From positions 8,294,654 through 8,339,400 of the forward strand of contig NC_068985.1 in assembly GCF_001194135.2 (NCBI RefSeq): a DNA stretch of 44,747 bases. Direction: 5' to 3'. This DNA is from Octopus bimaculoides. Taxonomy: Eukaryota. Under the pieces are notes generated by a model that worked only from the letters and a program-made list of their open reading frames with translations, was not told where the DNA came from and made no database searches. Shown here one piece after another: positions 13,101 through 43,544 of this stretch. Numbering within the stretch: the first letter of the stretch is position 1; each line of letters opens with the position of its first letter. The translations under genes were made by a program, and so were the position numbers.

Positions 13101-14769
13101 TAAAACTTTATGTGCAAAAATCTATCTGTAAAATTTCATTAAAGAATATGCATATTTCAAAATGTCATGAAGAAATGAAATTGGATTGAAATGAAATGTA
13201 TCTCCNNNNNNNNNNNNNNNNNNNNNNNNNNNNNNNNNNNNNNNNNNNNNNNNNNNNNNNNNNNNNNNNNNNNNNNNNNNNNNCTGTATGCATGTATATA
13301 TATATATAACTATTAGGTAATATATTTTCAAATCGTCTTCACATTACTGTCCTTTAGTCATGTCTATTTCATTTTCCACAAAACGTGGTGATATCCAAGT
13401 GAACAAATTCCTTCTCTTGTTGACTCCTATTCATTACTTACCACTGTGGAAATGATTTACCGTCAAGCCACCGTCGTATTCTTTCCAATTCTTTCCAATA
13501 ATTTTTCTGGTTTTGTAACTTTTGTTAAAAATCCTTACATCATTCAAACTTATGTTAATTGCCAATCTTCCAGATTTGTAGAATATCGACTTTCTAATGT
13601 ATAGCCTTTACCAGAATTTCTATAACTCTGGGTAACGCCCTTTTGCTCTACATTTTACTAGAGCTTACTGGATTTTGGTTGTAATAGTTTCAAGGCATAC
13701 TAAATCAGTTTGGGGCAAATTGCAGCCTGCGTGACTTCCTGAATGACACGCCTCGACGAAAACTTAACTTGAATTATTTTAGTGTGGCCCGCTCGATGAA
13801 GAGCCATGTCTCAGGTGGTTTGATTCTCAATAAATTTTATCCATGCCTGTTCTAGATGTTCATAGCTTTCTGGTCTACGTAAAGTAATCCATCGAAGGCG
13901 AAGATGACTCAATGCGTAATTAGATAATATAAGAAACAGTACATTTATGGAGCTGTACAGTTTCTTTCATCCACTCAAATTTCGAAATTCTCTGACAAAA
14001 AATGCCCTACTGGAGCTATGTCTTGTATTTTTGGAACGACAGAATTTATTGAATATGATTTGTGATGAATTGGTGTCAGTCTTATAAAAATCCTTATCTA
14101 CCTTAATTATTTGTTAGTTCGACACTTTTCCTTCCATTTTCCTTAGCTTTCTTTACCTGTCAAGCAAGTTAGCGAGAGCGGCGGCGTTCACGTGCCACGC
14201 CCAAAATACATTTGGCTTAGTCTTCTGTAACATACATACATTTTAGAAAGAAAGAAAGAAAAAAAACGGGCCCCGTACGAACCCTCAACGATTTACTTAA
14301 TTTATTTTGACTGGAAATTAATATATGATAATTTAATTTTTAATTGGTGGCAAATTAATTTTCTTACGTAGACAAATTTCTTCGCTGTTTCTGGATATTA
14401 GAAAAGTGAGCAAAATTCCTCTCTCTACTTCGTTTGAAATCAAATTTGTCTTTGATACTTTAGGAGTTTATTTAAAATGTACCAGTCTAAGACAGTGGAT
14501 TGGCGAATCTAATAAAATCGAGCTGGATATTTTGCGCTCTGAGTTCAAAGCACTCAATATTCTTACGTGGGTGGCCTGTTTAATGTCGCAGTGTGACACA
14601 TTGGGAGATTTTTATGTTGCAAGCATTTGGTTTCAGGGTATCTTCCTCACTCCCTCCACCATTTTTAAACTTCTCCAAAGGGTCATCTACCCTCCCGACG
14701 AAAAGATAAAAGAAAAAGTGCGCCTTTTACATTATATTTCAGACATAAAAATATATTTCGCTAAATATC

Positions 14770-14923
14770 ATAGGCGTGGCTGTGTGGTAAGAAGCTTACA
14801 ACAACATGGTTCCGGGTTCAATCCCACAGTATGACAACTTGAGCAAGTGTCTTTTGCGATAGCCTCTGGCTGACCAAGGCCTTGCGAGTGGATTTGGTTG
14901 CCAGAAACTGAGAGAAGCCTATC

Positions 14924-20993: not shown

Positions 20994-21613
20994 ACTCTTT
21001 TACACTTTTACTCTTTTACTTGTTTCACTCATTTGACTGCGGCCATGCTGGAGCACCGCCTTTAGTCGAGCAAAACGACCCCAGGACTTATTCTTTGGAA
21101 GCCTAGTACTTATTCTATCGTTCTGTTTTGCCGAACCGCTAAGTTACGGGGACGTAAACACACCACCATCGGTTGTCAAGCGATGGTGGGGGGACAAACA
21201 CAGACACAAACACACATAACATACATACATATACATATATACGGCGGGCTTCTTTCAGTTTCCGTCTACCAAATCTACTCATAAGGCTTTGGTCGGCCCN
21301 NNNNNNNNNGCCTAGTACTTATTCTATCGTTCTGTTTTGCCGAACCGCTAAGTTACGGGGACGTAAACACACCACCATCGGTTGTCAAGCGATGGTGGGG
21401 GGACAAACACAGACACAAACACACATAACATACATACATATACATATATACGGCGGGCTTCTTTCAGTTTCCGTCTACCAAATCTACTCATAAGGCTTTG
21501 GTCGGCCCGAGGCTATAGTAGAAGACACTTGCCCAAGGTGCCAGGCAGTGGGACTGAACCCGGAACCATGTGGCTGGTAAGCGAGCTACTTACCACACAG
21601 CCATTCCTACGCC
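20994..21613 (-). mobile_element. SINE family B, full length, with an assembly duplication around the 10-N gap
   Basis: Reverse complement of family B. About 21102-21299 is repeated at about 21310-21508. Confidence 0.85.
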
Positions 21614-22448
21614 TATAATAACCATTTTTTTTTTCTATCCGACTCTCCACATCAGAAACGCTCCCTTAGCTTTATGTTAACTCTCATCGTATCAAAAGTG
21701 TTCTAACCATGAACTTCTCATTTCATTTTATATTTCACATTATTTGACATGACTTTTGTTAAGTAGAAAAAGTGGGGGAATTGAAGTAAATTTGGCGGTA
21801 ATTTCTAACTGACAGAGTTACTAAGTTGTAGGCGCCTTTTCATTGACTAAAGAGATAAACAATTTAAACAGCAGGTGGTGTGGTTCTCTTAAGATAATCT
21901 TGTTTGTCGACCCACTCCGCTTTACTCATTGTTTTGCTCAACTGCTGAAACAGCAAAATATTACAAACAACCCGGAGATAAAATAGTTAAAACAAACAAA
22001 GAAAGACACTACGATCTTCCCAGTACTTGCGGGTATTTGGTAGTCACTCCCCGCCACCGTTATAGCAGCAACCACCACTACCCCCACCGCCGCCACCAAT
22101 ACACCATTATCTCTATTACTGCCACTATCACACAGCCACAGCCTTTACCACAATAACAACCGCCACCTACTTCTACGACTACTACTACTACTGAGCGCTC
22201 ATCACGGTCGATTGATTTGGTAGAAATAGCAGTCGCAGTTTCCTTAATCCACAATTTTTATATCCTAAAGCTAAATCAGAGAAAGGGGTTGGATCCTATA
22301 GTTTTTTGAAATATGAAAAAGTGTTGATGGTCGTGGTTGCAACGTCTTTGATCATAGTCCTGCCGAATCAGAACAGACTGTTAACAACAGAACTAGTGTT
22401 CCTTTAATAAATCATATCCTCACCACCACCGCCACCACCAACCGCAAC

Positions 22449-24846: not shown

Positions 24847-26562
24847 TATGTGTCGTTAGCTAGCTGGAAGAGATGCCTTCCTGGAGTTATAAACGTCAGT
24901 AGCACTGTCCCGTATAGTACCGCACACTTGGTTGGCAATTATATGCTACGATTCCGTATTGCTACTGTTTACACCTCACTCAGAGATTTAATATAACTTA
25001 TACATACATANNNNNNNNNNNNNNNNNNNNNNNNNNNNNNNNNNNNNNNNNNNNNNNNNNNNNNNNNNNNNNNNNNNNNNNNNNNNNNNNNNNNNNNNNN
25101 NNNNNNNNNNTATATATATATATGTTTGTGATTGTATATTGTATTTCTTTGTATGTATAGATAGTATTGTTGGAAATCACCTTCTCGTCTTTATTTATTT
25201 AGGTATTGTACTTGTAGGACTGTAAATTTCGACATTTTTAAAAACCAGTTGTGTGAGATTCATATTATTCGGTTGCAATTTCTAGCAGATCAAATGATCT
25301 CCACGAAGGCTCTCATGTTAGCTTTGTATTAACTTGATCAACAAACCTATCATGAAACTAATTAAGCTCAATGATGTCATCGGTGAAGCAGGAACTAAAT
25401 ATTGATCACAGAATAATTCAACCACGTAGGCCAGTTACAATGTTGTATCGCCCGTTCGACGTACGATATAACGGGATAATGATAACGTCCTTGCAAATCA
25501 TTTTACTCATGAAACTGATTATAACCTTCGACAATACGCAACTCTCGGCTTACTCTGTTCTCAAGGCTGTCTGTGTATGTCCATTTATATTGTGGCTCGT
25601 TGAAAAAAAAATTAAGTGTTTAAAGAATAATAATGATTCAGAGTCGCCTAACATAATGGAAATTATCATAGAAGCGCTAAAATTTAACTAAAACTATACA
25701 TTCGTAAAGAAAATATTATGTTACTAATAGCTTTTTAATATGTTCGTTAAGAAAGTCAACTTCAGACATGTTCTGCCTTTCTTTTTTTTAATGACCTTAT
25801 CAGCAAAGCATAAGGACACACTACACTTGCTGAAATGGTGACTAGAGAATCAGTTATAAGGAATACGTACATGACTATATACTGACTATGCTTCAGAGAC
25901 GTCTGCATGGAAAATTAATGTAAATGTAAATAATCCAAGAAGCCTTATGAATCTAACCAAAAAATAATTATGCCATGCAGTAACAAAAAATAAAAACAAA
26001 ATAAAAATGAAAAATAAAAGAAGTAAATTAGTTTGGCAAGTACGGGAGACAACTCCTGATATGTTTCAATCTTCTTATAATCTCGCCAGCAAAGCCATGG
26101 GCTTTAACATGTCGACATAGTTGTAGAAGAATCGTTCGTAACGATTTGTAGTCAACGTTTTAATGTTGTAATTAAACAATTAAGGTTTCTTGATAACATT
26201 AAAACTATTTACACTGAATCTACTACTGTAAATTCCTGCCGATGGCGCCTCTAATTTATGTTGGACATAGATTTCATGATTGTTAGTGGCTTGGACTCGT
26301 TATTTTCTATAGTCGGTGCGAGTGATTGTGGTGTTGGTCTTAAAATAGTTAGGAGCAATAATGGAAAAGTCCATCGTGATAACGGTGGTAACGAGAGCAA
26401 TAACTATGGTTACTGTAGCGACACAAGTTCTGATGGTTCAGGTGGTGGTGATGGTGGTAGTGGCAATATAATAACGTCATGTTAACTCTAAGTGGCTCAC
26501 AGACCATTCAGCAGGGCAGGTCGGTCGATGTTAATCATAGTAACAGTAGTCATAATGTAGTA

Positions 26563-26598
<36 letters not shown>

Positions 26599-26753
26599 GT
26601 AGCAGTAGTAGTCGTACAGACAGCGGTGGTGGTGGTGGTGGTGGTAGCAGGTGGTCGTCATGATGGTGGTAACTTTCACAATAAGCATGTACGTGACTTT
26701 GTTCCTTTAGTTCTGATCGATTATATTTTTTCTATTTCACAGAACAATTGAAA

Positions 26754-26823
26754 ATGAAGGCCGTAATATTATGCCTCGCTATTATGCTCTCTTACGCTCT
26801 ACTGGTAGCAGCAAACGTCAATA
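26754..26823 (+). CDS. Coding exon 1 of a small secreted/GPI-anchored glycopeptide (signal peptide)
   Basis: Acceptor ttttctatttcacAG at 26742, aaaATG, MKAVILCLAIMLSYALLVAANVN, phase-1 donor GTAAGT at 26824. Confidence 0.8.
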
Positions 26824-27139
26824 GTAAGTATTTTCTCTCTATATTACATACATGCATATATGTATGCATGTATGTATGTATATATTCATTTATTCTTTTA
26901 GGATCTTTTTTAAAACGGGGGCCACATTTTTCATTAACGAAACACTTTGAAACTTGGAACACTGGTAGAATGTGTCATATAAAACATCTTTTTCTCTTAG
27001 TCTTCTTTTAAAAAAAAAGAAATCCCTAAGTTATTCCATGTTAAAGTTGTCGTATTTCTGTAATTTCAACCAATCACTGACGTCCATTCAGCCGATATAC
27101 ATTAAGTGCCGACTACATAAACAAACGATTCTGAAACAA

Positions 27140-27203
27140 TTAACCCTAACCCTAATCCTAACCCTAACCCTAACCCTAACCGTAGGGTTAGGGTTAGGGT
27201 TAA
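27140..27203. repeat. Inverted telomere-type repeat (CCCTAA)~7 then (TTAGGG)~3
   Basis: Directly visible. Confidence 0.9.
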
Positions 27204-27788
27204 AGCAAATTTAAAATGAAAAAAGCAAATAAAACGAAGGTATGGAGATTAAATACGCTTTACATCGCTTAANNNNNNNNNNNNNNNNNNNNNNNNNNNN
27301 NNNNNNNNNNNNNNNNNNNNNNNNNNNNNNNNNNNNNNNNNNNNNNNNNNNNNNNNNNNNNNNNNNNNNNNNNNNNNNNNNNNNNNNNNNNNNNNNNNNN
27401 NNNNNNNNNNNNNNNNNNNNNNNNNNNNNNNNNNNNNNNNNNNNNNNNNNNNNNNNNNNNNNNNNNNNNNNNNNNNNNNNNNNNNNNNNNNNNNNNNNNN
27501 NNNNNNNNNNNNNNNNNNNNNNNNNNNNNNNNNNNNNNNNNNNNNNNNNNNNNNNNNNNNNNNNNNNNNNNNNNNNNNNNNNNNNNNNNNNNNNNNNNNN
27601 NNNNNNNNNNNNNNNNNNNNNNNNNNNNNNNNNNNNNNNNNNNNNNNNNNNNNNNNNNNNNNNNNNNNNNNNNNNNNNNNNNNNNNNNNNNNNNNNNNNN
27701 NNNNNNNNNNNNNNNNNNNNNNNNNNNNNNNNNNNNNNNNNNNNNNNNNNNNNNNNNNNNNNNNNNNNNNNNNNNNNNNNNNNNNNNN

Positions 27789-27826
<38 letters not shown>

Positions 27827-27827
<1 letters not shown>

Positions 27828-28156
27828 AGGGGTTCTTTCAGCTTCCGTCTACCAATCCATTCACAAAGCTTTTGTCGGCCCGAGGCTATAGTAGAAGACA
27901 TTTGCAAGGTGCCACACAGTGGAGCTGAACCAAGAACCATGTGGTTGGGAAGCAAGTTTCTTACTACACAGCCACTCGTATTAATATATATATATAAAAC
28001 AAATAATAAATGAGTATATGCATATATACGTACAGGTATGTGCATACCTACGTCTACCTGTATATATAGGTGCATATCTGGGTACAGGACATTGCAANNN
28101 NNNNNNNGTATATATAGGTGCATATCTGGGTACAGGACATTGCAAACAAAGCGTAG

Positions 28157-28193
<37 letters not shown>

Positions 28194-28353
28194 TGGTGTG
28201 TTTACGTCCCCGTAACTTAGCAGTTCCGCAGAAGAGATCCGATAGAATAAGTACTAGGCTTACAAAGAATAAGTCCTGGGTTCGATTTGCTCGACTGAAG
28301 GCAGTGCTCCAGCATGGCCACAGTCAAATGACTAAAACAAGTAAAAGAGTAGA

Positions 28354-28426
<73 letters not shown>

Positions 28427-28800
28427 TGTATATATTCTTACCACACAGTCACCAGAGGTATTTTAATATGCTGACCACTTGATGAAATTTTGGGGAAAAA
28501 AATTTATCCTGTATTAGAAGTATCTTTCTATCTATCTATCTATCTATCTAATGTATATATATTCTTACCACACAGCCACTACTGTATATATATACATGGA
28601 AGAAGGTGAGAGAGAAAGGCTGGTGGCGTTTGCCGAACTGCTAAGTTATGGTGACGTAAACAAACCAGCATGGGTTGTGAAGCAGTGTTGGGGACAAACA
28701 CAGACACACACATACGTACATACATACATACATACTATTTCTGTCCACCAAATTCACTCACAAGATTTTGATCGGCCCGAGGCTATAATATAAGACACTT
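27827..28800. mobile_element. Intronic SINE family B fragments (27827-27976 minus, 28190-28350 plus, 28620-28800 minus)
   Basis: Matches to the family B head and tail. Confidence 0.8.
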
Positions 28801-29619
28801 GAACGAGATATCACATATGTTGTTAGGGACTAGACATCAGAGATAAGCGAAAGAAAATAGATATTCTCTGTGCATGATGGAAAATAATTGTGAACAGGCC
28901 GGTGATTGAAGTTGAAAGAATGGAAAAAAGTGAAACAGAATACAGGAAGAGGGTTTCGGGGCCATGCGAACTGGATCATGAAGTATCAGATTTCGTTGGA
29001 GAATTTGTGCAATGCTCAGGTATCTGTAGGATAACAAGAAAGCTTCGCAAAGAAGGAAAACAAAAATTGCACTGTATTTATATCATATATAATCGTAGAA
29101 AATCACAGATGTCGGGATGAAGTATTATACTATCTTCTTTTGGGTCAGAATTCAAACTTTATGCTGAAGTTTCCTTGTGTCTCTTGGGCTTCATCCTAGT
29201 AAATCTCTTGGAATTGTTTTTTTGCGATATATGGATGATGTAAAATTATAGCATAACTTTAGATCATGACAACACGACAAAACTTCCAAGTATATAATGT
29301 TATTACTCGCTATAGTAAGCATTCTATCATAAGAGTATACAACGTTATCGCTGTTTAGAACTGACTTGTTCTGTAAGGATGTTTATTTACAGTCATGTGT
29401 ATTACATTCTGTTAATTAAATGGACACGTTGCTGTAGCATTGACAAATAGGAATAACCGATTCCTCAGTAGATTGTCAATTTTATCTATTTTTCAAGTTT
29501 CGATATACAGCTGCATAAAAGTTATTATTTGTATTATGATGGGACAAGAAGTCGTGTTGCAATTTTAGATGCGACAGAAACAATCGCTTCTTCGCTCCTA
29601 ATTGGGAGATTTAATCAAG

Positions 29620-30530
29620 ATAATATTTCCAATCATTATTGATTACATGATACCTCATATCTGGCTAATTGTTGATCACTCGGGCATAAAATTCTTCAGG
29701 TTTGGAAACAAAGAAAAAGCTCGCTATAATTTTTGACCCCTTTACGAGTAATAAACACTTTTCCTTCTAAATAATTTTCTAATGATCTGGAAATATGATT
29801 ATCACATGGAGCCAGATCAGGACAATAAGGAAGATGAGGCAAGGCTTGCATATTTAGTGTAATAATCTTTTCGTAAGTGACTTGGACAATAAGTGGTCTG
29901 CATTATGATTTACCAACGGCGGTCCCTTTTCCTTCAAGGGCTCGGTATTAACAGTTTCGTCGTTTTGGCTAAACACTTCATGATAGACGACACCTTCATC
30001 TCCCACCAAACTCAGAGCATAACATTTTCGATTGCAATCTTGGCTTGGTATGGATTACCTCTTTTCGTTGGGTATTGACCACTGTTGTTCTTGTTGGATA
30101 TAGTTATAGAGAAGGTACTTTTCATCACTTGTGATTACTCTAGCCGAACAACGATGCAGAGCAGAGGTCAACTCTTTAATTACACTGAGAAGCCGCCAGC
30201 GGATGAAGAGCCCACTAGCCAAGTTTAGACACTTTTCCCAGTGTTTTTTGATCCAGGTGTGACTTGAATTGTTTTTCTAATTCTCGTGAAGTTTGCTTTG
30301 AATTTTCATCAACTATGGTTTTCAGAATTTCAGTATTGACAGAACTTGTTTGTCCAATTCAAGGGATGTGCGGCAGAAAAACTAGCCAAATCACCGTTGG
30401 CATATCCGGACACTTAAAGGTTTATTTCCATAGACAAATGAATATTCTTTGCCGTTTCTATTGCTAAAAAGTCCATTTTGAATTCATACAGCATGCAATG
30501 CCTGACATGGGTCTGATTTAAACCCGCTTC
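29620..30530 (-). pseudogene. Decayed mariner transposase, intronic
   Basis: HVRHCMLYEFK at the N-terminus, remnants of the WVPHEL and TGDEKW regions, and LPHLPYCPDLAPCDNHISRSLENYLEGK (YSPDLAP motif). Many stops and frameshifts. Confidence 0.85.
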
Positions 30531-31205
30531 AAAAGGATAAAATCGATACAAATTTAACCACTATAGTATAAAATAATCTGTAAAGAAAGAGAAAAACGTT
30601 GGACTATAACACTTAATGCTAGTTTTACCGTAAAAAGTACCATCAAAGGGATCATGTCAAAAATGTGACAAGCCTTTCTTTCCAACTTAATACATATTTT
30701 TAACATTGGTATTGGATAATGTTAATTAATTGTGGTAGGCATACTTTAAAGAAGAAACGGAGAAAATATGGCTTCAGTCTAGATCCAAAGTTGAACTGAC
30801 TACATAAGGAAACGCATTTTCCTACCTATGTTGTTTTGTTACCGTTGGATAGTCCAGTGTAAAGCTAACTGAATAGGCATATCATCGAAGGTATTTCAGC
30901 TATAACCATCACATATTTTTAGGGTTATGCAGATCAACATTATTCGACGTATTCTTCTTATAATTGTGGTGGATATATCATTTGATGACCATTTGTCTGT
31001 TGTTTCGTTAGAAGTCAGTCAACAAGTCACAGGCTCAATCATTAGGTCGATTAAACTAAATATGCATACAGCAATATGTCAATTTTTTTCTGTTTAAAAA
31101 AAGTTGTAATGTTTCTCAAATAAAACTTATTGTCAAATATTGTAATATTCGAAAACAAACTATTTTTTTTAAATGCTAACATTGAGTCTCACTATTATAC
31201 TTCAG

Positions 31206-31297
31206 CAACTGATAGCAACGTAACAATGTTTACTACACAAGGAATGGATGGGAATATGACAACTCAAATTCCAGAAACTACCACTTCAGGATATTCG
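31206..31297 (+). CDS. Coding exon 2 (Thr-rich mature peptide)
   Basis: Branch point CTAAC at 31176-31180, acceptor cttcAG at 31205, phase-1 entry matching exon 1, (T)TDSNVTMFTTQGMDGNMTTQIPETTTSGYS, phase-0 donor GTATGT. Confidence 0.8.
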
Positions 31298-31512
31298 GTA
31301 TGTTTATATTATATAGAAAGTCTATGGAGAAATAGAATTCCGTTTATTTTTGTTTGTATAATTTGTTCCCCAGAAAGGTGGAGAGCTAGCAGAGAGGTTA
31401 ACATGCCGGACACAATTCTTAGCGGCATTTCGTCCGTCTTTTCATTGTGAGTCTGTTGTATCCTTATGGATAAGCGAATGCACTGCAACAGTGTAATAAC
31501 AATATAATCGAG

Positions 31513-31738
31513 GGCGGTGAGCTGGTAGAATCATTAGCACACCGGGCAAAATGCTTAGCGGTATTTCGCTTGCCGCTACGTTCTGAGTTCAAACTCCACC
31601 GAGGTTGACTTTGCCTTTCATTCTTTCGGGGTCGATAAATCAAGTACCAGTTACGCACTGGGGTTGATTTAATCGACTTAATCCATTTGTCTGTCTTTGT
31701 GTGTCCCCTCTATGTTTAGTCCCCTGTGGCCAATAAAG
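31513..31738 (+). mobile_element. SINE family C
   Basis: ggcggtgagctggtagaatcattagc...ttctgagttcaaactcc...; homologous to 33009 and 15585. Confidence 0.85.
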
Positions 31739-32479
31739 CGGGTTACTGCCGTTTGTTTCGATTATATCTATATGTAATCGCACGTAACGCAACAACAATC
31801 TTTTAAGTACAAACAATCCAACACGCTAACTCGAACTGTGAACTTTGAACTCTAGCTTTGAACTATTAACACATGAAGTATAGAACTAGCACGAACTTTC
31901 CTCCGTATTTGCCACATCGGGCATAACGAAGATGGGGCAGTGCAAGGACAGACAAAACTAGCACAAACTACCTTACTCAGACTGCTTCTATATATATATA
32001 TAGTGGTCCACTCCATTCTTGCCAGAAGGCGTCCTACTCTCGCACAACAGAGTCCCAGTTCCGACGAGGATGACCTAGCTGGTCATCCCTTCGGCATCAA
32101 TGTAATCGATTAACCCGCTCCTACAAACTTTAAAGACTTGTGCCTTTATTAGAAAGAAATATTTAGTCCCCAGGGCAACACTAATCCAAATGTTACCATT
32201 TCCATGTTGAATCTAAAATTACATTATCGTATGTGCTCCTCCTAAAGTCTCTGCGTGTCATGTCAAAGAATTTTGATTCCCAGGCTCGCATATTTTTCGC
32301 GTAATTTTTGGTCGGAAACGTCAAAAAACCTGACACGAATAAAGTCACTGTATCAAAGATTTTCATCTTGTTATCTTACATATATCATGCCTAGCTTATA
32401 TGCTGAAGACCAAGCATGTCGACATCTGTCTTAGCTTACGTTCAAATATTAAGCTCTCGGTTGCGACAACGAATGCTCC

Positions 32480-32745
32480 AAATAGTTGGCAAATTAAGGT
32501 GTAAATGGCTGAGTATTCCGCAGTCACGCGTACTTTCAACGTAATTCTCAAGGAGATTCAACATGACAGAATTTCACAAACTTGACCGTTTGAAATACTG
32601 GTACTACTTTTTCTTGCTGGCTGAGTGGATTGAAGTAACTTGAAATAAAGTGTTTTGCACAAGGACATTATTCGCCGCCGAGAATCAAACTTATAAGCAT
32701 ATGATTGTGAGCCGAATACCCTAGCCACTAAACCACGCGCCTTCA
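32480..32745 (-). mobile_element. Old tRNA-derived SINE (family D-like)
   Basis: The minus strand starts gaaggcgcgtggtttagtggctagggtattcggctc and carries a ccttgtgcaaaacactttatttc core. Confidence 0.65.
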
Positions 32746-33008
32746 TACGTTCATATATACGGGGCTTTGGAAAGGATGAAACTACTTCGCAACTTATACT
32801 AATAACGCTAAAAACCAGAATGAATAACGCAAGTCAGTGTATCGGGTGCTCTGACGATGCACATGAACTATTGCGTAACAACGTAAAATTATTAGCTAGT
32901 GAAGCAAAAACTGTATTCGTCGGTGACAAATATTATTTAAAATTTTTGTGAGGCGGATATGTTTTGGTATTATTATAACCTCATCAATGAAATATAGCCT
33001 TTACCTAA

Positions 33009-33225
33009 GGTGGTGAGCTGGCAAAAACGTTAGCACGTCAGGCGAAATGCTTAGTGGTATTTCGTCTGTCTTTACGTTCTGAGTTCAAATTCCGCTGAGA
33101 TCGACTTTGCCTTTCATCCTTTCGGGATCGATAAATTAAGTACCAGTTGCCTACTGGCGTCGATCTAATCGACTGTCCCTCCTCCGCCCAAATTTCGGGC
33201 CTTGTGCCTAGAACAGAAAAATATT
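33009..33225 (+). mobile_element. SINE family C
   Basis: Homologous to 31513-31738. Confidence 0.85.
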
Positions 33226-33389
33226 TAGCCTTTACTTAGCTATTCTGGAGGCGCAAGTATGTAAATAGCTAATCGAGATAGTTTGAATACTGAGATACTA
33301 AAATTACTGAGTTATTTTTTCCTTTAATTGAATATTATATATAAATATTTGAAATATATAATAATTACTTATTTCTCTTTCTTTTGCAG

Positions 33390-33449
33390 ATTGTTATACC
33401 TTCAGTTTTGTTTGTCGGAGCAGCGAATTTATTACAGCGATTTTTCTGA
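33390..33449 (+). CDS. Coding exon 3 (hydrophobic GPI-signal-like tail and stop)
   Basis: Strong acceptor atttctctttcttttgcAG at 33389; in phase 0 it reads IVIPSVLFVGAANLLQRFF*. Confidence 0.75.
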   Translation: MVIPSVLFVGAANLLQRFF

Positions 33450-33514
33450 ATGATTACTTTCAATCAATAATATTTGCAATATAATTTTTTATATAAATGT
33501 CTTGAAACAATATA

Positions 33515-33520
33515 AATAAA
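33515..33520 (+). promoter_or_regulatory. Candidate polyadenylation signal
   Basis: AATAAA about 65 nt after the stop. The sequence is AT-rich, so a chance match is possible. Confidence 0.4.
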
Positions 33521-34199
33521 ATCTTTGATAATTGTATCACGAATTTAAATCTGTCTTCATATGTTCAATGATTATACTACGATTGATGCCGAAAAAAAAT
33601 AACAGAGGATGAATAATGAAATTGAATTTGCTATCGGGTTTGGAGGAGCCGAATATAAAAATGAAGAACAAACAAAACAAAGAGCAAAGACAAAAAAGAA
33701 GAAAAATTCAAAAGTTGTGAAATGGTGTATTCCTGTAATGAATCCAGACCCAGAATGAAGTAAATTCCGGCAAAACCATCAGAAAATAATATGCTTACTC
33801 AAGTGTAATTTGTTTAAATAAATAATATCATTCTGACATAAAATAAAAATATTTATTTATTTATTTCTCATCATGTGGTGATAACTTTGTCGATGGAGCT
33901 TGAGACAATTTAAAAAATTTTTTATGTGACTTTGAGTCCACTGGTCAAGGTGTAAGATGCTCAAATTGCCTCCTCTTTCTCAGTATTCACCATGTTGATG
34001 TATAATCAAAGGCAATCTATCAGTGGCCATGATGTCTATTTTTTAAAATTCTGACATGGATTAAGAAATAAAATTATGTATAAAATCTGTATCCGTCCGT
34101 TTCTATTATAAGGCGATAGGATGTTATCTGTGAGAGATTTAGTTGTTATTTCTAGCAAGTCGAACGATCATTTAGAAGCTGACCCCTTAAAATTGCATG

Positions 34200-34267
34200 G
34201 AAGCCGCAGGCGCGAGCCTGCGTGAAGCCGACCGCGGGTGCAGATCTCGGTGGTAGTAGCAAATATT
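34200..34267 (+). rRNA. Isolated 28S rRNA fragment (not a functional gene)
   Basis: gaagccgcaggcgcgagcctgcgtgaagccgaccgcgggtgcagatctcggtggtagtagcaaatatt matches the conserved LSU segment ...GGUGCAGAUCUUGGUGGUAGUAGCAAAUAUU, recognised from memory. Confidence 0.85.
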
Positions 34268-34269
34268 GC

Positions 34270-36480
34270 TGTCAAAGCAACCCCTTTTCAGTGCACTGTT
34301 CTGATAGAATAACAACCAAATCTCTCAGATGATACCGTACTGTCTTACAAAAGAGGATTCGTTGGATAATGTCGTTTTGTATACAGTATGTTTGAGAAAG
34401 TGGGATGGATATGAAATGGGCAGCTATTAATTAAAGGTTTGCTTGATCTTAGATTTGTTCAATTTGGAATATTATGGTTCAATGCAACGCTAAAAGTCAA
34501 ACAGCTTACTCCTCTTGGGAATAGCAGATTCCGTGACATGTTTCTTTGTTTTAGAGTTGATAAACGGACATACATCCATGCATACATACATGCATACATA
34601 CATACATACGTATATACACGAAAGAACGATACCGACACGAGTTGGAGAAAGTCCCACCGACCTGATCTTATCCGTGATCAACGAAATTGCGAGACAACAA
34701 GTAGCTCAAATCCAAACTCCTAACTTTTGGACAATAATGTCCTACTATATTGTACCGCAGTAACTGTGCACCAACAGCTGGGAGTAAGAGAGACCGATCC
34801 GAACGATAACACAGAACCAAAAATGAATTTTTTCCTTACATCAATGGACTCAGGGAAAAAGATAAGTCAGCTGGACTCTATCATCAAAAATGCGAGGCTA
34901 AATATGAGTTCACGAATCACCAGCTAAGACTGCATGATAGGTTCTCCAAATTGTATGGGAACTGCTGCCGAGAAACAACCACAGAAAAACTTATCACCCT
35001 CAAATATGATCTATGTGTAGTAAGTTCATATCTTGGTTACTGTAAAAGATTACACGAACGGAAAATGATAAAATGAAAGTTTGCTTGAAATTCACAAGCT
35101 GTATATTACAGTTATTGTGAAACTGCCGAATGGAGAATCATCAGGGAGAGACCTGATAGTAGGTTACTGTTACACAAACCTCACGTTCTATAGGGAAGCC
35201 CCATGTGACCAAAAACTATAGGCTCATAGCATAACAAGATATTAAGACTACATACTGGGATATGCAGAAAAGGATAAAATTAATGCCACCCACAAATATC
35301 TTTTTTGCTTTGTTTGATGATCTGTACACAGGCTGTCTGAATATGGATATGAATATGACCTTAAGAATGCCAATCAATATCACCGAAATCTCTAAACGGT
35401 ATGGCTAGCCTACAAGAAGGGGTTCGACTCTGTGCTTCACTCGTGGGTGGTAGAAACACTACACTTTGCCAAAGTACCAGCTGTTATTGTTAATGGCATT
35501 GAAAGATTGACCACTGACAACTACTAAAGCAACACCTACTGTTACAAACACTATTTAGTTATCAATAGGCATATTCCAGGCCGATAGTTTATCTTTAATG
35601 CCGTTTGTAGTAACAGTGAATCTTTTGTCAGCCCTTTTAACAAGATACGAAGACTACATGCTTGGATATGCAAGAAAGAATAAAATTAATGTCACCCACA
35701 CATTTTTGTTGAAGACCTAAAGTTATATTCTAGTAATATGACTAACATCAAGAGATAATTAAAACTAGTTACAATATTCTCACGAGATATAGGAATAGAG
35801 TTTGAGTAAGATAAATGCTCATATATGATAGACAACCGAGGAAAGATTCTCGATTAAGCAAAGAACGTGTACATCAACGGCTTGTCTATCTCCCCTATCT
35901 CTAATGATGAAAGTTACAAGCACCTCGGAATCAATGAGAATGTTGCATACGTTGGTGCTGTGACTAAAGTCAGAATAACAAAAAGAATACTTCTATAGAC
36001 TCCGGAAAATATGGAACTCGGAGTTGTCTTCATTTAATAAGATCATATATCACAATTCTTCTGCAGTACCAGTGCTAGTACCAACATTTTAAACATTGGA
36101 CTAGGCACTCAATGAAATACGCAGCCTGGACATCAAAACCAGAAAAGAACTGACCAACACTGGCAACTTCCACATTAACTCTGACACCGATAGGAGAAAA
36201 AGTGATGGAGGTTGAGGCATAAGGCCAGTCCAAACAGCCTTTGAATGTCATATTGTATCACTCAGACCTTGTGGACAGTAAAGAAAGAAACGAGTACATT
36301 CCATACATACTCAAAAGTGAGATAAAAAAAAACGTCTTCAGAGTGGAAGAATTACTGTGCAAGCACTCTGAGAACACATGTCTCATACGCCCCAAATGAG
36401 GCTGGACTGGCCTATTTAAACAGCGAATGTAACTTACTTCAAAAAGATCTGAAATTAACTTTCTTCCGAACAGAATAATC
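34270..36480 (+). mobile_element. R4/Dong-clade non-LTR retrotransposon, copy A (N-terminus and RT), degenerate
   Basis: YKKGFDSVLHSWV, GIFQADSLS, a decayed xxDDLKLY motif, YKHLGI, AVPVL, LDIKTRK, NFHINSDTDR. Many stops and frameshifts. Confidence 0.85.
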
Positions 36481-36483
36481 AAA

Positions 36484-37950
36484 AGTTCCCTTCTCATGGG
36501 TGCCAGACGCCCTTCGTTTTGCTAAAGTTCCAGTTAGCATAGTCAATGCTATAGCTGACCTAGCTTCATCGTGGGTCACAATCTTGAAGTTAAATACAAA
36601 GGGCCTTGACCTGATTACAATATTCCCAAAGGATACAGGATTGAAGTTTGGTCAGGATAAATGTTGAGATATGGTTGAGAAAAGAGGGGAAACTGTAAAC
36701 CAGACTGGCAGCGTCTCCATCAATGACTTAACCTTTTCTCTGTATCTTATGAGAAATGTTACGGGTACCTAGGGGTGGATGGAAACAAATCTTACGATGG
36801 TACCTGTAAAGAGACAAATGCCACTAAAGAATATTGCAGCCTGATAAGTAAAATATGGGCCTCAGAACTCTCTGCATTCAATAAAATAGTGGCCCACAAA
36901 GCGTTTACAGTACCAGTACTCATACCGGCATTTGGGCTGCTTGATTGAACGCTTGATGAGATCCTAGCCATTGATGTGAAAACCCGGAAAATACTAACAA
37001 GCACATAATTTTCACATCAACAGTGATGTAAACCGACTCTGTTTGAAACGAAAACAAGGGGACGGAGGCTTAACATCGATCCAGACTGCCTTTGAATGTC
37101 ATATCATATCCCTTCGGCAACATCTTTTAACCATTAGGTGTCGAAGTGCATCTCTTGACCAAGTTTGAAAACACGAGGCTGATAATATCATGAGACTTGG
37201 AAAGCAGCTCCTCGAGCAACATTATCCGATAACCTTTAATACCTGTCCAAAGAAGTCGTACGTCTCTACCGCAACGTATTATCAGATGGGAGGATGAGTG
37301 TATATGAGCAGAAGACCATGTTGGCAGAAAGCTCCAGTGTAACAGCTACGCTGATTGTCAAAGCAGTTTGCCATAGACCAACAGCCGGTTTACTAACTCT
37401 CACTTTGAAGGAAATTAACCAAATACTTAATGCACAAAAGGGAGAGAGACGTAGGGACAAAACACCAAAAGGTAATAACCGATGCAGACTTTGTGAAGTT
37501 AACACCAAAAATATTACTCACATTATAAGCAGTTATCCAAAAATGTTATCGCGTTATTATCTACCGATGAGACATGATGTTGTAAGCAAGGGACTGTATA
37601 ATGAGATACGCGGAAAGGGTAACCACGAGGTCAAAGAAATAAGAACCCACAGTATGGTAGATGCCATAGCCACTCATAAGTGCTGGTGGAATGTTTCAGA
37701 GAAAATCTTAATAACATGTAAACACAACAGACCTAATACAATGGTTTGGGACGCAGAAGAGAAACTGTGTACAGGTGTACAGTAGTGGAAATGAGATGCC
37801 CAGCAGATGATAACATAAGGCTAAAGATGAGCGAAAAGGAAAATACCTACGCTGAACTGTTGACAAATCTACAGTTACTGTACCCAAAATACAAGTCATT
37901 ATGCAAAGAGTCATTGGCTCACCGTCGTCGTCGTTTAGTTCCAGACTAAA
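36484..37950 (+). mobile_element. R4/Dong-clade element, copy B (partial RT, CCHC and restriction-like endonuclease)
   Basis: VPFSWVPDALRFAKVP, RKQGGR, CRLCEVNTKNITHIISSYP...RHDVV, HNRPNTMVWDAEEKLC..VEMRCP (PD-(D/E)xK region). Confidence 0.85.
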
Positions 37951-38019
37951 CACGATTGAAAAAAAATCTAAATTCGAAAGATATTTCTTTCATAGGCTTC
38001 ATTTTGTCTATACCTGAGA

Positions 38020-38395: not shown

Positions 38396-39202
38396 CTATT
38401 AAAACCTACATCATCCAGTGTGCACTTGCTTTCATTTTTTTAAAAAGGCAGAGTAAGATTAATGGAAGTTTGGTTACTGTTTCTAGCGACTCAAACATCG
38501 TTATAGGGACTTCTTTACTTGCACACCATCGTGGTGACTTAGCTCTCAGATAAGCCAATCTTAGACCAAAGGCTTCCCTGCAGTGCTGAATTTGCGCTAT
38601 CTTTATGTGTTAGAGCATACTGAGAAAATGTTTAAAATACATGGAGTTTTACCACAGAAGGAAACTTTGAAGATATACCATCAACTTTATTATATTATCT
38701 AGTAGATAATCTTTTAATGTGAAGTATGTTTTAAGAGAGATTTGGCTGCTATTTGGAGTAGTTCAAGTTACCACAGAGACACCTCTGTGTGTGTGTTTTG
38801 TTGTGGTTATTTAGCACAATAATTTTTAAAGAAATCTGGACAACTTTCTTATTGCTAACCATTCAACTTCAAATTGCAATTGTTAATCGTTGGATGTACA
38901 TATAGAGTGGGATGTACATATAGTGTTATCGTATAGAGTGGAAGTTCAATAGGAAGTGTCGAACTCATAATCTTCTGGTTAGTAATCTATTACCTTAAAT
39001 TTGAAGCCATTAAGTCTATTTTACTGTTGCCATGATGGGGTATCACCTTAAAATATTTAACTGATCATACTGACTTCAGTACGTATTTCAATCTGGCATT
39101 TATCTTATAGATCTCTGCTTGATGGACTGCTATCTTTGTGACATAATGAGACACAATACTCGATTTAACAACAGATTAAACACACACACACACACACACA
39201 TA

Positions 39203-39944: not shown

Positions 39945-40690
39945 ATTGACCTTAAACTTTGATGCGCATGCTCACTAAGTTCTAATGTTCTAGCTCAATT
40001 CCGCATTTTACAGCAGTGTTTGGAAGGAAGGTGTGTAGCGTGTGATCGTCACATTGACTATGACAGAGAAAGTTGATCAGAGAGTCTGCATCAAAGTTTG
40101 CCAAAAGTTTGGTGATACCTGCTCACAGGCCTACGCAAATTTTCAAAAGGTTTTCATTCTTCTCAACACAATCAAGGAGATCTTGTGCAACTGAAACCCG
40201 TCTTTTTGTTCAGCTGAAAGCAGTTTTGGCACAAACTTAGCAGACACGCGTCTCATACCCAAATCTTTTAGTGATAATGGACTGAACTGAACCGTAACTA
40301 ATCTGCCGATCTTATGATAACTTACGGATGGTGATTCGATGGTGATTTCCTCTCGCAGCTGGACGCATATCTGCGATGTTTTTCTCAGTTCTGCTAGTTG
40401 TAGGTCTCTGAGAACGTTCGTCGATACCGACATTTTGTCGGCTATCTTCGAAACGTGAGAACCACTCGTACACTTGTGTGCGGCTCATGTACCTCTTTCC
40501 ATACACTTTCTGCAACTTTCCGTAGGCTTCTGTGTAGGTTTCGCCATGACAACTATCATTGTCATGGTCAATGCGACGATCACACGCTACACACCTTCCT
40601 TCCAAGCATCGCTGTAAACCACGGATGTGAGCCAGATTGTTAAAACTTAGTGCACATGCACAGCAGGATTCAAGGTCAATCTTTGTCAAG
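39945..40690. mobile_element. Two convergent mariner 5' ends (plus about 39945-40140, minus about 40140-40690)
   Basis: Plus: MTEKVDQRVCIKVCQK. Minus: MSRTQVYEWFSRF...RPTTSRTEKN...RRVSAKFVPKLL. The leaders are homologous in inverted orientation. Confidence 0.8.
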
Positions 40691-40777
40691 TGACTCTATT
40701 CTGCGTGCTATAGCTTCGTTACTATCGCAACAGTATGGTAACTTATTGATCAGACCGCGTATATATACATACATACA

Positions 40778-41224: not shown

Positions 41225-42416
41225 ACAGGGAACTCGTCTAATTTCAGCGACTCATTATTGTTTCACTGGAGGTATTCTCTTAATGTGTAGCTAATTGGTA
41301 ATTTTAGTAAGATTTCACACGCGGCACGCAGTTGTTCTTGCAGAATCAAAGCTCATTCCTGGCGCAGTTTTGCCTTCAGAGCATCGAGCGATGCATGAGG
41401 AGTGCCCGAAACCCTCGTCTCCAAAATGGACCAATCAGAAAAATCCAACGGGTTGAGATCGGGGCTTCTTGAAGGCTATACATCTTTACCTGTGAACGAC
41501 GGAATATTTTTTCTGAATCCAGTGTTGTGCCTGTTTGGAGCTATTGGATGATACTGAGACCCGTTGGAGGCTCCAAGGCGCACCTTGAAGGTACTCATTC
41601 GCCCATGGAAGCAATCCGGCTTCCAGAATGTCGCTAAAGAATCGCTGGGTAATTTTAACACCCGAGGGCACAAAAACGAGGAGAGACTTTCCACTGGCTG
41701 TCACAGCAGCCCAAACCATAACTGACAGTGGATTTTGACGTTCATTTACGAGTCTACCCTCGACGGAGCCAGATACTCCCCAATGTCGGTCATTGTGGTG
41801 GTTTACTGTTCGATGTCAAATTTCTTTTCATTACTGAATACCAGGTTGAGCAGCGTGTGCCTTCAGCAATCTGATGCAGAATAAGACGACTTCTCTCCTG
41901 TCTCATGGCCTCATAAACTTATATGAGCTCAAGACGACGGGTCGTGTTTTAGGGGTGTGTCCTGAGATCATCCTTCAGTACTCGATACGTTGATGTTTGG
42001 CTTATTTTTGCTGTGACAGCCAGTTTTCTGACGGAACGACGAGGATTTCACCGCATCTTTTCTCTCGTATTTTGATAAGGTCAGGGGTCTGCACACTTAT
42101 TTTTTGGTCATGTCCAGGTCAATCAGTGATTGAACCAGCCTCTTGAAATCTGTTGACAATTATCCGGACTGTCGTTCGGCTAAGTTTAAGTTTTCTTTTT
42201 GCTGCAGCTGTATTATTTTCGCTTCGTTTGTAGAAGATACTGATTGTGTTTCGGTCTATAGCCATTATCTAATTTATAAATCTGAATTTATTTAGTCTGA
42301 AACAGAAAGAAGATACACGAAGCTTTAATATTGATGTATAATTTTCATATCTTATCATATTTATTGGTAGTTATTAAACACCGTATCTTCGGTTGCCTTA
42401 ATTTCGGGCCACCCCG
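41225..42416 (-). mobile_element. Tc1/mariner superfamily element of maT (DD37D)-like type, decayed
   Basis: VFSNEKKFD, SVMVWAAVTASGKSLLVFVPSGVK, a decayed QQD region and a SPDLNPLDFS motif. TIR-like end caccccg+TA at 42416; the other end is weak. Confidence 0.8.
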
Positions 42417-42676: not shown

Positions 42677-43544
42677 NNNNNNNNNNNNNNNNNNNNNNNN
42701 NNNNNNNNNNNNNNNNNNNNNNNNNNNNNNNNNNNNNNNNNNNNNNNNNNNNNNNNNNNNNNNNNNNNNNNNNNNNNNNNNNNNNNNNNNNNNNNNNNNN
42801 NNNNNNNNNNNNNNNNNNNNNNNNNNNNNNNNNNNNNNNNNNNNNNNNNNNNNNNNNNNNNNNNNNNNNNNNNNNNNNNNNNNNNNNNNNNNNNNNNNNN
42901 NNNNNNNNNNNNNNNNNNNNNNNNNNNNNNNNNNNNNNNNNNNNNNNNNNNNNNNNNNNNNNNNNNNNNNNNNNNNNNNNNNNNNNNNNNNNNNNNNNNN
43001 NNNNNNNNNNNNNNNNNNNNNNNNNNNNNNNNNNNNNNNNNNNNNNNNNNNNNNNNNNNNNNNNNNNNNNNNNNNNNNNNNNNNNNNNNNNNNNNNNNNN
43101 NNNNNNNNNNNNNNNNNNNNNNNNNNNNNNNNNNNNNNNNNNNNNNNNNNNNNNNNNNNNNNNNNNNNNNNNNNNNNNNNNNNNNNNNNNNNTCATAAGA
43201 TAAACATAATAAAAAGATTACACGTGTTTCATAACTAATTTTCAAATAGAAAGGAAATTTAAATCGATTAAAATCAATTGGAATTATCGAAAATAAATTC
43301 TATTCAAAAATATAGCTAATCGTCAGATCGTAAGTAGAACAATAATTAGATATATATATCTCAACCAACAATAAGTACCAAATGAATTAATATGAAATAC
43401 TTATTATATAAAGATAGAAAAAATATTAAAAATATCATAATATCAAAATAATAACCATTCAATAATCATCCCTTCATCCATTATAATAACATGTATATTA
43501 TATACAAAAAACATCTTACATAAATTATCATTGTTTTAAATTAT

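What the first reader, a model, noticed from the sequence alone, without database searches (positions are those of the whole stretch)
26743..33520. Hidden three-exon gene for a 73-aa CD24/CD52-like GPI-anchored glycopeptide
Seen: splicing 26754-26823, 31206-31297 and 33390-33449 at consensus GT-AG sites with matching phases (1/1, 0/0) gives MKAVILCLAIMLSYALLVAANVNTTDSNVTMFTTQGMDGNMTTQIPETTTSGYSIVIPSVLFVGAANLLQRFF*. It has an N-terminal hydrophobic stretch, three N-X-T sequons (N23, N28, N40; N23 is created by the splice junction), 12 Thr/Ser in residues 21-51, and a hydrophobic tail with no cytoplasmic domain. Established: signal peptide + tiny glycan scaffold + GPI signal is the architecture of mammalian CD24 and CD52. 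Inference: cleavage near A20 and an omega site near S51 leave a mature peptide of about 31 aa, a lineage-specific surface glycopeptide that homology-based annotation would miss. The acceptor before the ATG implies an unlocated 5' UTR exon.
Basis: partly seen in the sequence, partly recalled or inferred. Interest (0 to 1): 0.85.

Follow-up and report, generated by a model that had tools for sequence, protein, structure and literature searches.

The report
Unannotated small octopus surface-glycopeptide gene candidate
Three short, cleanly spliceable exons in repeat-rich octopus DNA would encode a 73-residue protein that looks like a tiny sugar-coated, membrane-tethered peptide, but there is no expression or conservation evidence, so it remains a plausible unproven orphan gene.

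Summary
Joining 26754-26823, 31206-31297 and 33390-33449 at GT-AG sites gives exactly the stated 73-aa ORF, with phases 1 and 0 and three N-X-T sequons. Both assembly gaps lie inside intron 1, so no codon crosses them.

The model is better than chance. The exon-3 acceptor is the best-scoring AG on the strand. Exon 2 is open only in the frame that exon 1 requires. Comparable models arose in 2 of 350 simulated windows and in none of the real-DNA controls.

Everything beyond that is inference:
- No relative or exact copy exists in about 15 billion proteins. That collection was shown to include the annotated O. bimaculoides, O. sinensis and O. vulgaris proteomes.
- There is no Pfam match, including CD24 and CD52, and no transcript data could be reached.
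- The GPI signal is plausible by hand, with omega better at G52 than S51, but it was not tested with a predictor.

My estimates are about 0.65 that this is a real gene and about 0.45 that it is a GPI-anchored glycopeptide. The likeness to CD24/CD52 is architectural, not homology. It is an ordinary kind of find: an unannotated orphan gene candidate.

The parts
26713..26742 (+). Acceptor region before the start codon: CTGAT branch-point-like motif (26713-26717), T-rich tract and AG at 26741-26742. It implies an unlocated upstream (5' UTR) exon if it is used.
   Evidence: PWM score 9.7, rank 14 of 2259 AGs on the + strand. CTRAY motif present (base rate 7.5% of AGs).
26743..26753 (+). Short 5' leader AACAATTGAAA giving the start context AAAATGA.
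   Evidence: AAAATGR context at 15 of 783 ATGs in the window.
26754..26823 (+). Coding exon 1 (70 nt): MKAVILCLAIMLSYALLVAANVN plus 1 base. Signal-peptide-like. Donor ATA|GTAAGT.
   Evidence: donor score 5.7, top ~3.6% of GTs; the only signal-peptide-like first exon in the window that is not microsatellite-derived; about 1.7 such first exons are expected per window by chance, so exon 1 alone is not significant.
26824..31205 (+). Intron 1 (4382 nt as assembled). It contains gaps 27273-27788 and 28098-28107, SINE copies, microsatellites and a telomere-repeat palindrome. CTAAC branch-point motif at 31176-31180.
31206..31297 (+). Coding exon 2 (92 nt): (T)TDSNVTMFTTQGMDGNMTTQIPETTTSGYS. The S/T-rich glycopeptide core with sequons. 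Acceptor cttcag|C, donor TCG|GTATGT.
   Evidence: open in only one of three frames, the one exon 1 demands; the only one of 296 exon/frame candidates with S/T >=35% and >=2 sequons; unique in the window.
31298..33389 (+). Intron 2 (2092 nt), with SINE-derived repeats.
33390..33449 (+). Coding exon 3 (57 nt + TGA): IVIPSVLFVGAANLLQRFF*. Hydrophobic C-terminal tail (candidate GPI-attachment signal or short membrane anchor).
   Evidence: acceptor tcttttgcag|A scores 12.4, the best of 2259 AGs on the + strand; hydrophobic terminal exons are about 1% of candidates; tail length and hydrophobicity fall in the range of known GPI signals.
33450..33520 (+). Presumed 3' UTR, with AATAAA at 33515-33520.
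   Evidence: Weak evidence: AATAAA recurs 4 times in the next 620 nt of this AT-rich DNA.

Best explanation
The locus is most likely a real, unannotated, lineage-restricted octopus gene. It has three coding exons and probably a 5' non-coding exon further upstream.

Inferred pathway for its 73-aa product:
1. The N-terminal signal peptide takes it into the ER and is cut after A20 (V18-A19-A20|N21).
2. Oligosaccharyltransferase glycosylates N23, N28 and N40. All three are N-X-T sequons.
3. The T/S clusters may receive mucin-type O-glycans.
4. The GPI transamidase removes the C-terminal ~21 residues at G52 (or S51) and attaches a GPI anchor.
5. The outcome is a ~31-32-residue acidic peptide (3 D/E, no K/R/H) whose mass is mostly glycan, held on the outer leaflet of the plasma membrane.

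It would then act as a glycan scaffold: glycocalyx or anti-adhesive coat, or a lectin ligand. This is the design mammals use in CD24 and CD52, reached here without any detectable homology.

Only the sequence features are shown. Transcription, splicing, cleavage, glycosylation and anchoring are all inferred.
For: - Exact ORF and canonical GT-AG sites with compatible phases.
- Both donors have near-perfect intron sides, GTAAGT and GTATGT.
- The exon-3 acceptor is the best AG on the strand, and the pre-ATG acceptor ranks 14 of 2259.
- CTRAY branch-point motifs lie 25-30 nt upstream of two of the three acceptors, against a 7.5% base rate.
- The start context is AAAATGA.
- Exon 2 is open in only the required frame.
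- Exon 2 is the only S/T- and sequon-rich exon candidate among 296.
- The exons are single-copy islands between SINEs and microsatellites.
- Full models of this quality arose in 2 of 350 simulated windows. None arose on the minus strand or in two other octopus loci.
- The hydropathy profile shows two hydrophobic ends and a polar core.
Against: - No transcript evidence could be accessed.
- No relative or exact copy exists among about 15 billion proteins. That collection holds the annotated proteomes of three Octopus species and at least a few Logan octopus transcript contigs.
- There was no hit in metagenome contigs. The HMMER hits to exon 2 are spurious repeat proteins.
- There is no paralog in the window.
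- A signal-peptide-like first exon alone is expected by chance about 1.7 times per window.
- Exon 1 lies on a small contig joined only by scaffolding.
- The simulation thresholds were set after seeing the candidate.
- The omega region is not textbook. Y53 is unfavourable at omega+2 if omega is S51. The spacer IVIPS is rather hydrophobic, and R71 sits near the C-terminus.
- The exon-2 acceptor is only moderate (top 13% of AGs).
Confidence: 0.45

Rival explanations
1. Chance assembly. The three segments are unexpressed intergenic DNA in a transposon-rich region. The coherent-looking ORF comes from picking compatible GT/AG sites and hydrophobic or T/N-rich translations in AT-rich sequence.
For: - Signal-peptide-like first exons occur about 1.7 times per simulated window, and signal peptide plus hydrophobic-tail chains in 70% of simulated windows.
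- At the loose thresholds, about 0.6% of windows give a full model.
- There is no homolog, annotation or transcript trace.
- The surroundings are transposon debris with no other host gene.
Against: - Several independent signals were not used to select the model: the best acceptor on the strand, the second strong acceptor before the ATG, branch-point motifs, the start context, and the single open frame of exon 2 matching the phase.
- No simulated model had a strong terminal acceptor.
- The real-sequence controls gave zero (minus strand, other octopus loci).
Confidence: 0.3
2. The gene and exon structure are real, but the C-terminal segment is a short transmembrane anchor with a 4-residue cytoplasmic stub (QRFF), or the product is simply secreted. 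On this reading it is a small type-I mucin-like microprotein rather than a GPI-anchored one.
For: - The hydrophobic stretch S54-L69 runs almost directly from the polar core with little polar spacer.
- A basic residue (R71) follows it, as at the cytoplasmic end of membrane spans.
- Y53 is unfavourable at omega+2 for omega = S51 (and reading of the sequence; GPI rules from established knowledge of omega-site preferences).
Against: - A stretch of 16-17 hydrophobic residues containing P58, S59, G64 and N67 is short and weak for a stable transmembrane helix.
- The tail length (21 aa after G52) and hydrophobicity match known GPI signals.
- G52/S54 give an acceptable omega/omega+2 pair.
Confidence: 0.17
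3. Some of these exons are real but belong to a different transcript structure. Possibilities are an extra exon hidden in the 516-N gap, an upstream coding exon spliced to the 26742/26743 acceptor so that M1 is internal, a mis-scaffolded exon 1, or exon 2 splicing to a different downstream exon.
For: - Exon 1 sits on a 2.16-kb contig between gaps.
- The frame upstream of the ATG stays open back to the acceptor (xAA CAA TTG AAA ATG), unless the upstream exon ends in T.
- The enumeration lists alternative in-frame downstream exons at 36266-36316 and 38419-38533.
Against: - The alternative downstream acceptors are far weaker than 33390.
- No Pfam domain occurs in + strand open segments from 33603 to 38014.
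- The gap's right flank is a truncated SINE, so the gap content is probably repeat.
- M-K followed by a 16-residue hydrophobic run right after a good start context is typical of a true N-terminus.
Confidence: 0.08

Closest known systems
CD24 (mammalian heat-stable antigen; Pfam CD24 family)
   Same: Overall design and size: about an 80-aa precursor, signal peptide, a ~30-aa S/T/N-rich heavily glycosylated core, and a ~21-aa C-terminal GPI signal with no cytoplasmic domain. The candidate's tail length and hydrophobicity are similar.
   Different: The candidate has three coding exons, whereas mammalian CD24 splits its coding sequence over two (from memory). The taxon is a cephalopod. GPI anchoring is unproven here.
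CD52 (CAMPATH-1 antigen; Pfam CD52 family)
   Same: A minimal GPI-anchored glycopeptide with an N-glycan very close to the mature N-terminus. CD52 has it at N3 (from memory); here N23 would be residue 3 after cleavage at A20. It is an acidic peptide that serves mainly as a glycan carrier.
   Different: No sequence similarity. The mature peptide would be ~31 aa against 12 aa, with three sequons against one. The gene structure and lineage differ.
Generic small GPI-anchored mucin-like surface peptides of other lineages (e.g. trypanosomatid small mucins, Dictyostelium PsA)
   Same: Signal peptide + short T/S-rich glycosylated core + GPI signal. These families are lineage-restricted, fast-evolving and hard to find by homology (established knowledge).
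   Different: No relationship was tested or expected. Those families are usually multi-copy, whereas no paralog is present in this window.

Membership tests
CD24 family (Pfam CD24) | Sequence match to the family profile or to a member | tested here: not met
   The Pfam-A scan at E<=1 returned only a sub-threshold DUF2798 hit.
CD52 family (Pfam CD52) | Sequence match to the family profile or to a member | tested here: not met
   There was no Pfam hit.
GPI-anchored protein (generic class) | Cleavable N-terminal signal peptide | tested here: inconclusive
   Judged by inspection and hydropathy only. The n-region is M-K, the h-region is A3-V18 (mean KD >2), and small or neutral residues V18 and A20 sit at -3 and -1. 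SignalP was not available.
GPI-anchored protein (generic class) | C-terminal hydrophobic tail of about 15-30 residues running to the C-terminus with no cytoplasmic domain | tested here: met
GPI-anchored protein (generic class) | Small residues at omega and omega+2, followed by a short polar or flexible spacer | tested here: inconclusive
   G52/S54 is an acceptable omega/omega+2 pair. S51/Y53 is not. The spacer IVIPS is more hydrophobic than usual. This is a reading of the sequence only; NetGPI, PredGPI and big-PI were not available.
GPI-anchored protein (generic class) | Experimental release by PI-PLC or a chemically identified anchor | not testable with these tools
   This is a wet-lab assay.
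Expressed spliced protein-coding gene | Canonical splice sites with compatible phases and an uninterrupted ORF | tested here: met
Expressed spliced protein-coding gene | Transcript evidence (junction reads or cDNA) | not testable with these tools
   No octopus RNA-seq is searchable by DNA here. The exact 73-aa product is absent from the 15-billion-protein collection. That collection holds only 2 Logan-derived members even for octopus rhodopsin, so the absence carries little weight.
Expressed spliced protein-coding gene | Conservation in related species | tested here: inconclusive
   No similar protein was found in the collection, which includes the annotated O. bimaculoides, O. sinensis and O. 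vulgaris proteomes. Genomic DNA of other cephalopods could not be searched.

The most novel reading that the evidence does not exclude
An octopus- or cephalopod-restricted orphan gene has independently arrived at the CD24/CD52 design: a minimal GPI-anchored peptide whose only job is to display N- and O-glycans on the cell surface. It is missed by all current Octopus annotations. It may be one of a class of tiny lineage-specific surface glycopeptides that homology-based annotation systematically overlooks.
Probability: 0.4. Interest if true: 0.45.

Novelty: new member of a known kind. Interest (0 to 1): 0.3.

Why it matters
If real, it adds a cephalopod example of convergent evolution towards a minimal GPI-anchored glycan carrier. 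It would also show that small, fast-evolving surface glycopeptide genes escape annotation in repeat-rich mollusc genomes. Its tissue of expression (skin or sucker epithelium, sperm, haemocytes, neurons) would point to a role in cell-surface glycan display. It does not open a long-standing question, and a specialist would not be greatly surprised. Unannotated orphan genes with a signal peptide and a hydrophobic tail are expected in such genomes.

Tried and rejected
- Homology search with the 73-aa product against 5.8 billion cluster representatives: one word-sharing candidate, nothing at E<=10.
- Exact look-up among 15 billion proteins: absent.
The read-through ORF around exon 2 is not on record.
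- Calibration 1: a 260-aa transposon ORF of the window found only one distant hit.
- Metagenome scan with back-translated peptide patterns: 600 pattern hits, none confirmed.
- HMMER with the 30-aa exon-2 peptide against 1.84 billion representatives: three hits, all LRR or 'LDGNVTKKQ' repeat proteins matched in many stretches, so spurious.
- Pfam on the product and on 19 neighbouring open segments, plus concatenated downstream + strand segments: only transposon domains (zf-CCHC, HTH_48, RVT_1) and nothing for the candidate.
- PDB sequences: nothing. Rfam: nothing in the window.
- Literature searches for cephalopod GPI or mucin-like peptides, for CD24/CD52 in invertebrates, and for the SINE string: nothing relevant.
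- Paralog search within the window: none.
- Rejected idea, that the exons are pieces of a repeat: they are unique. Only intronic flanks match repeats.
- Correction of my own error: the SINE matches first credited to the O. bimaculoides locus are in the O. sinensis locus.


Full report
**What is in the sequence.**
- Exon 1 (26754-26823, 70 nt) starts at an ATG in the context AAAATGA and ends at ATA|GTAAGT.
- Exon 2 (31206-31297, 92 nt) lies between cttcag| and |GTATGT.
- Exon 3 (33390-33449) follows tcttttgcag| and ends in TGA.
- Joined, they give 222 nt and the exact 73-aa product quoted, with intron phases 1 and 0.
- The sequons are N23-T-T (spanning the first junction), N28-V-T and N40-M-T.
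- Residues 21-52 hold 12 S/T, three acidic and no basic residues.
- A further acceptor (ttctatttcacag|) ends 11 nt before the ATG, and AATAAA lies 66 nt after the stop.

**The assembly gaps.** Both gaps fall inside the proposed intron 1, so no codon crosses them and 'in frame across the gap' does not arise.
- The 10-N gap (28098-28107) has the same 38 nt on both sides. This looks like an unmerged contig overlap, so the sequence is continuous there.
- The 516-N gap opens on its right into the internal (CA)n and the 3' half of a SINE. That stretch aligns to positions 145-340 of the copy at 21270-21640. The gap should therefore hold that SINE's 5' half and microsatellite. An extra exon cannot be excluded.
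- The more serious caveat is that exon 1 lies on a 2.16-kb contig (25111-27272) with gaps on both sides. One of these is a 100-N gap. Exons 2 and 3 lie on a 14.5-kb contig.
- The physical linkage and orientation of exon 1 therefore rest on scaffolding, plus the coherence of the model itself.

**Source organism and surroundings.**
- The window is AT-rich (37% GC) and full of microsatellites and a SINE present in at least seven copies.
- The same SINE occurs at 82-94% identity next to the rhodopsin gene of Octopus sinensis (L002). The window's pattern of many odd-sized N runs matches the O. bimaculoides assembly GCA_001194135.2 (L001).
- The genus Octopus is therefore shown. O. bimaculoides is only suggested.
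- Everything recognisable around the candidate is transposon debris: a gag-like zinc-knuckle ORF (548-1339, -), a reverse-transcriptase remnant (14337-14831, +) and a Mos1-type transposase remnant (40315-40695, -).
- No Pfam domain was found in open segments of the locus or in + strand segments up to 38 kb.
- Rfam finds nothing in the window.

**Is it more than chance?** I scored all GT and AG sites with generic metazoan splice-site matrices. These were written from memory and used only for ranking within the window.
- The two donors are in the top ~3.5% of GTs. The exon-3 acceptor is the single best of 2259 AGs on the strand. The acceptor before the ATG ranks 14th. The exon-2 acceptor is only in the top 13%.
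- CTRAY branch-point motifs sit 25-30 nt upstream of two of the three acceptors, against a base rate of 7.5%.
- Exon 2 is open in only one frame, the one exon 1 demands.
- I enumerated all 2-4-exon models starting with a signal-peptide-like first exon. The candidate's exon 1 is the only first exon that is not microsatellite-derived. All six models that pass every filter use exons 1 and 2.
- Exon 2 is the only S/T- and sequon-rich exon among 296 exon/frame candidates on the real and reversed strands. Hydrophobic terminal exons make up about 1% of candidates.
- In 350 second-order-Markov simulations of the window, 2 produced any model passing all filters. None of these had a strong terminal acceptor in the 250 simulations where that was scored.
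- Two other octopus loci (48.5 kb, both strands) produced none.
- Two cautions apply. The thresholds were set at the observed values, so these numbers flatter the candidate. A signal-peptide-like first exon on its own (about 1.7 per window), or signal peptide plus hydrophobic tail (70% of windows), is fully expected by chance.
- At the loose level, a multi-gigabase genome would yield hundreds of such models. The extra signals that did not drive the selection make a real gene the better bet. These are the best acceptor, the second acceptor, the branch points, the start context and the frame match.

**External evidence.** None could be obtained.
- The product has no relative among 5.8 billion cluster representatives and is not present as an exact sequence among 15 billion proteins.
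- I calibrated this with octopus rhodopsin. The collection contains the annotated proteins of O. bimaculoides, O. sinensis and O. vulgaris, but only two Logan-derived members even for that very abundant transcript.
- The gene is therefore not annotated as a protein in those three species. The absence of a transcript-derived copy says little.
- A metagenome scan found nothing.
- A full HMMER search with the exon-2 peptide found only repeat-protein artefacts.
- Pfam and PDB searches found nothing.
- No paralog is present in the window.
- The literature searches returned nothing relevant.

**What it most likely is and how it would work.** I put the probability of a real gene with this coding structure at about 0.65.
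- The product reads as a secretory-pathway protein. It starts M-K, followed by a 16-residue hydrophobic core, with V-A-A before N21. This fits cleavage after A20.
- The core is polar, acidic and S/T-rich, with three N-X-T sequons. The first would be residue 3 of the mature peptide, as in CD52.
- The protein ends in 19-21 mostly hydrophobic residues with no cytoplasmic domain.
- The most economical mechanism is GPI anchoring.
- The mature product would be a ~31-32-residue peptide carrying up to three N-glycans and possibly O-glycans on the outer membrane leaflet, that is, a glycan scaffold.
- I give this full reading 0.45. I give 0.17 to a short transmembrane or secreted variant, 0.08 to a different exon structure, and 0.30 to chance.

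**Comparison with known families.** The resemblance to CD24 and CD52 is one of architecture only. There is no Pfam match and no BLASTP alignment, and the exon structure differs. It should not be filed as a member of either family. It belongs to the generic, repeatedly evolved kind of small signal-peptide/glycopeptide/GPI-signal surface proteins. If real, it is a new, lineage-restricted member of that kind.

**Verdict.** This is a credible but unverified orphan-gene prediction of a familiar type, in a transposon-rich stretch of an octopus genome. Junction-spanning RNA-seq reads and a look at the syntenic locus in other octopus genomes would settle it quickly. Neither could be done with the tools at hand.

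Noticed in passing
window 27141-27203: Head-to-head telomere-type repeats: about six CCCTAA units run directly into three TTAGGG units, forming a palindrome (27159-27202 matches its own reverse complement at 91%). It lies 70 nt before the 516-N gap, inside the proposed intron 1. It could be a genuine interstitial telomeric inversion or an assembly artefact.
   Followed up: partly
window 28060-28145: The 10-N gap at 28098-28107 is flanked by an identical 38-nt sequence on both sides (TRF period 48). This looks like two overlapping contig ends that the scaffolder did not merge, so the true sequence probably has one copy and no gap.
   Followed up: yes
window 21101-21509, plus copies near 4254, 7229, 9071, 28199 and 28640: An abundant octopus SINE with an internal microsatellite. 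There are at least 7 copies of its 5' half in the window, one as a 209-bp tandem duplication. The same family sits beside the O. sinensis rhodopsin gene at 82-94% identity. Several assembly gaps open inside its microsatellite.
   Followed up: partly
window 5-1339 (-) and 2407-2802 (-): Gag-like ORFs with a CCHC zinc knuckle (Pfam zf-CCHC, sub-threshold), apparently two diverged copies of one retroelement. The only database relative is a 53%-identical MetaClust protein.
   Followed up: partly
window 40146-40695 (-) and 41489-41815 (-): Frame-shifted remnants of a Mos1/mariner-type transposase (HTH_48 domain, E=2.7e-07). The DDE-like part did not reach Pfam thresholds.
   Followed up: partly
window 35396-37782 (+) and 14337-14831 (+): Degenerate non-LTR retrotransposon reverse-transcriptase fragments. 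RVT_1 is sub-threshold at 14337-14831. RT-like motifs are visible by eye in segments downstream of the candidate, but Pfam did not detect them.
   Followed up: partly
window 27273-27788 and 42677-43192; 25011-25110: Two gaps have exactly the same length (516 N). An exactly 100-N gap lies just upstream of the exon-1 contig. These look like placeholder or estimated sizes, so distances across them are unreliable.
   Followed up: no
window 7462-7885: A long imperfect (AGA)n/(TCT)n microsatellite of about 140 units, which produces long spurious S/F-rich ORFs on the minus strand.
   Followed up: no
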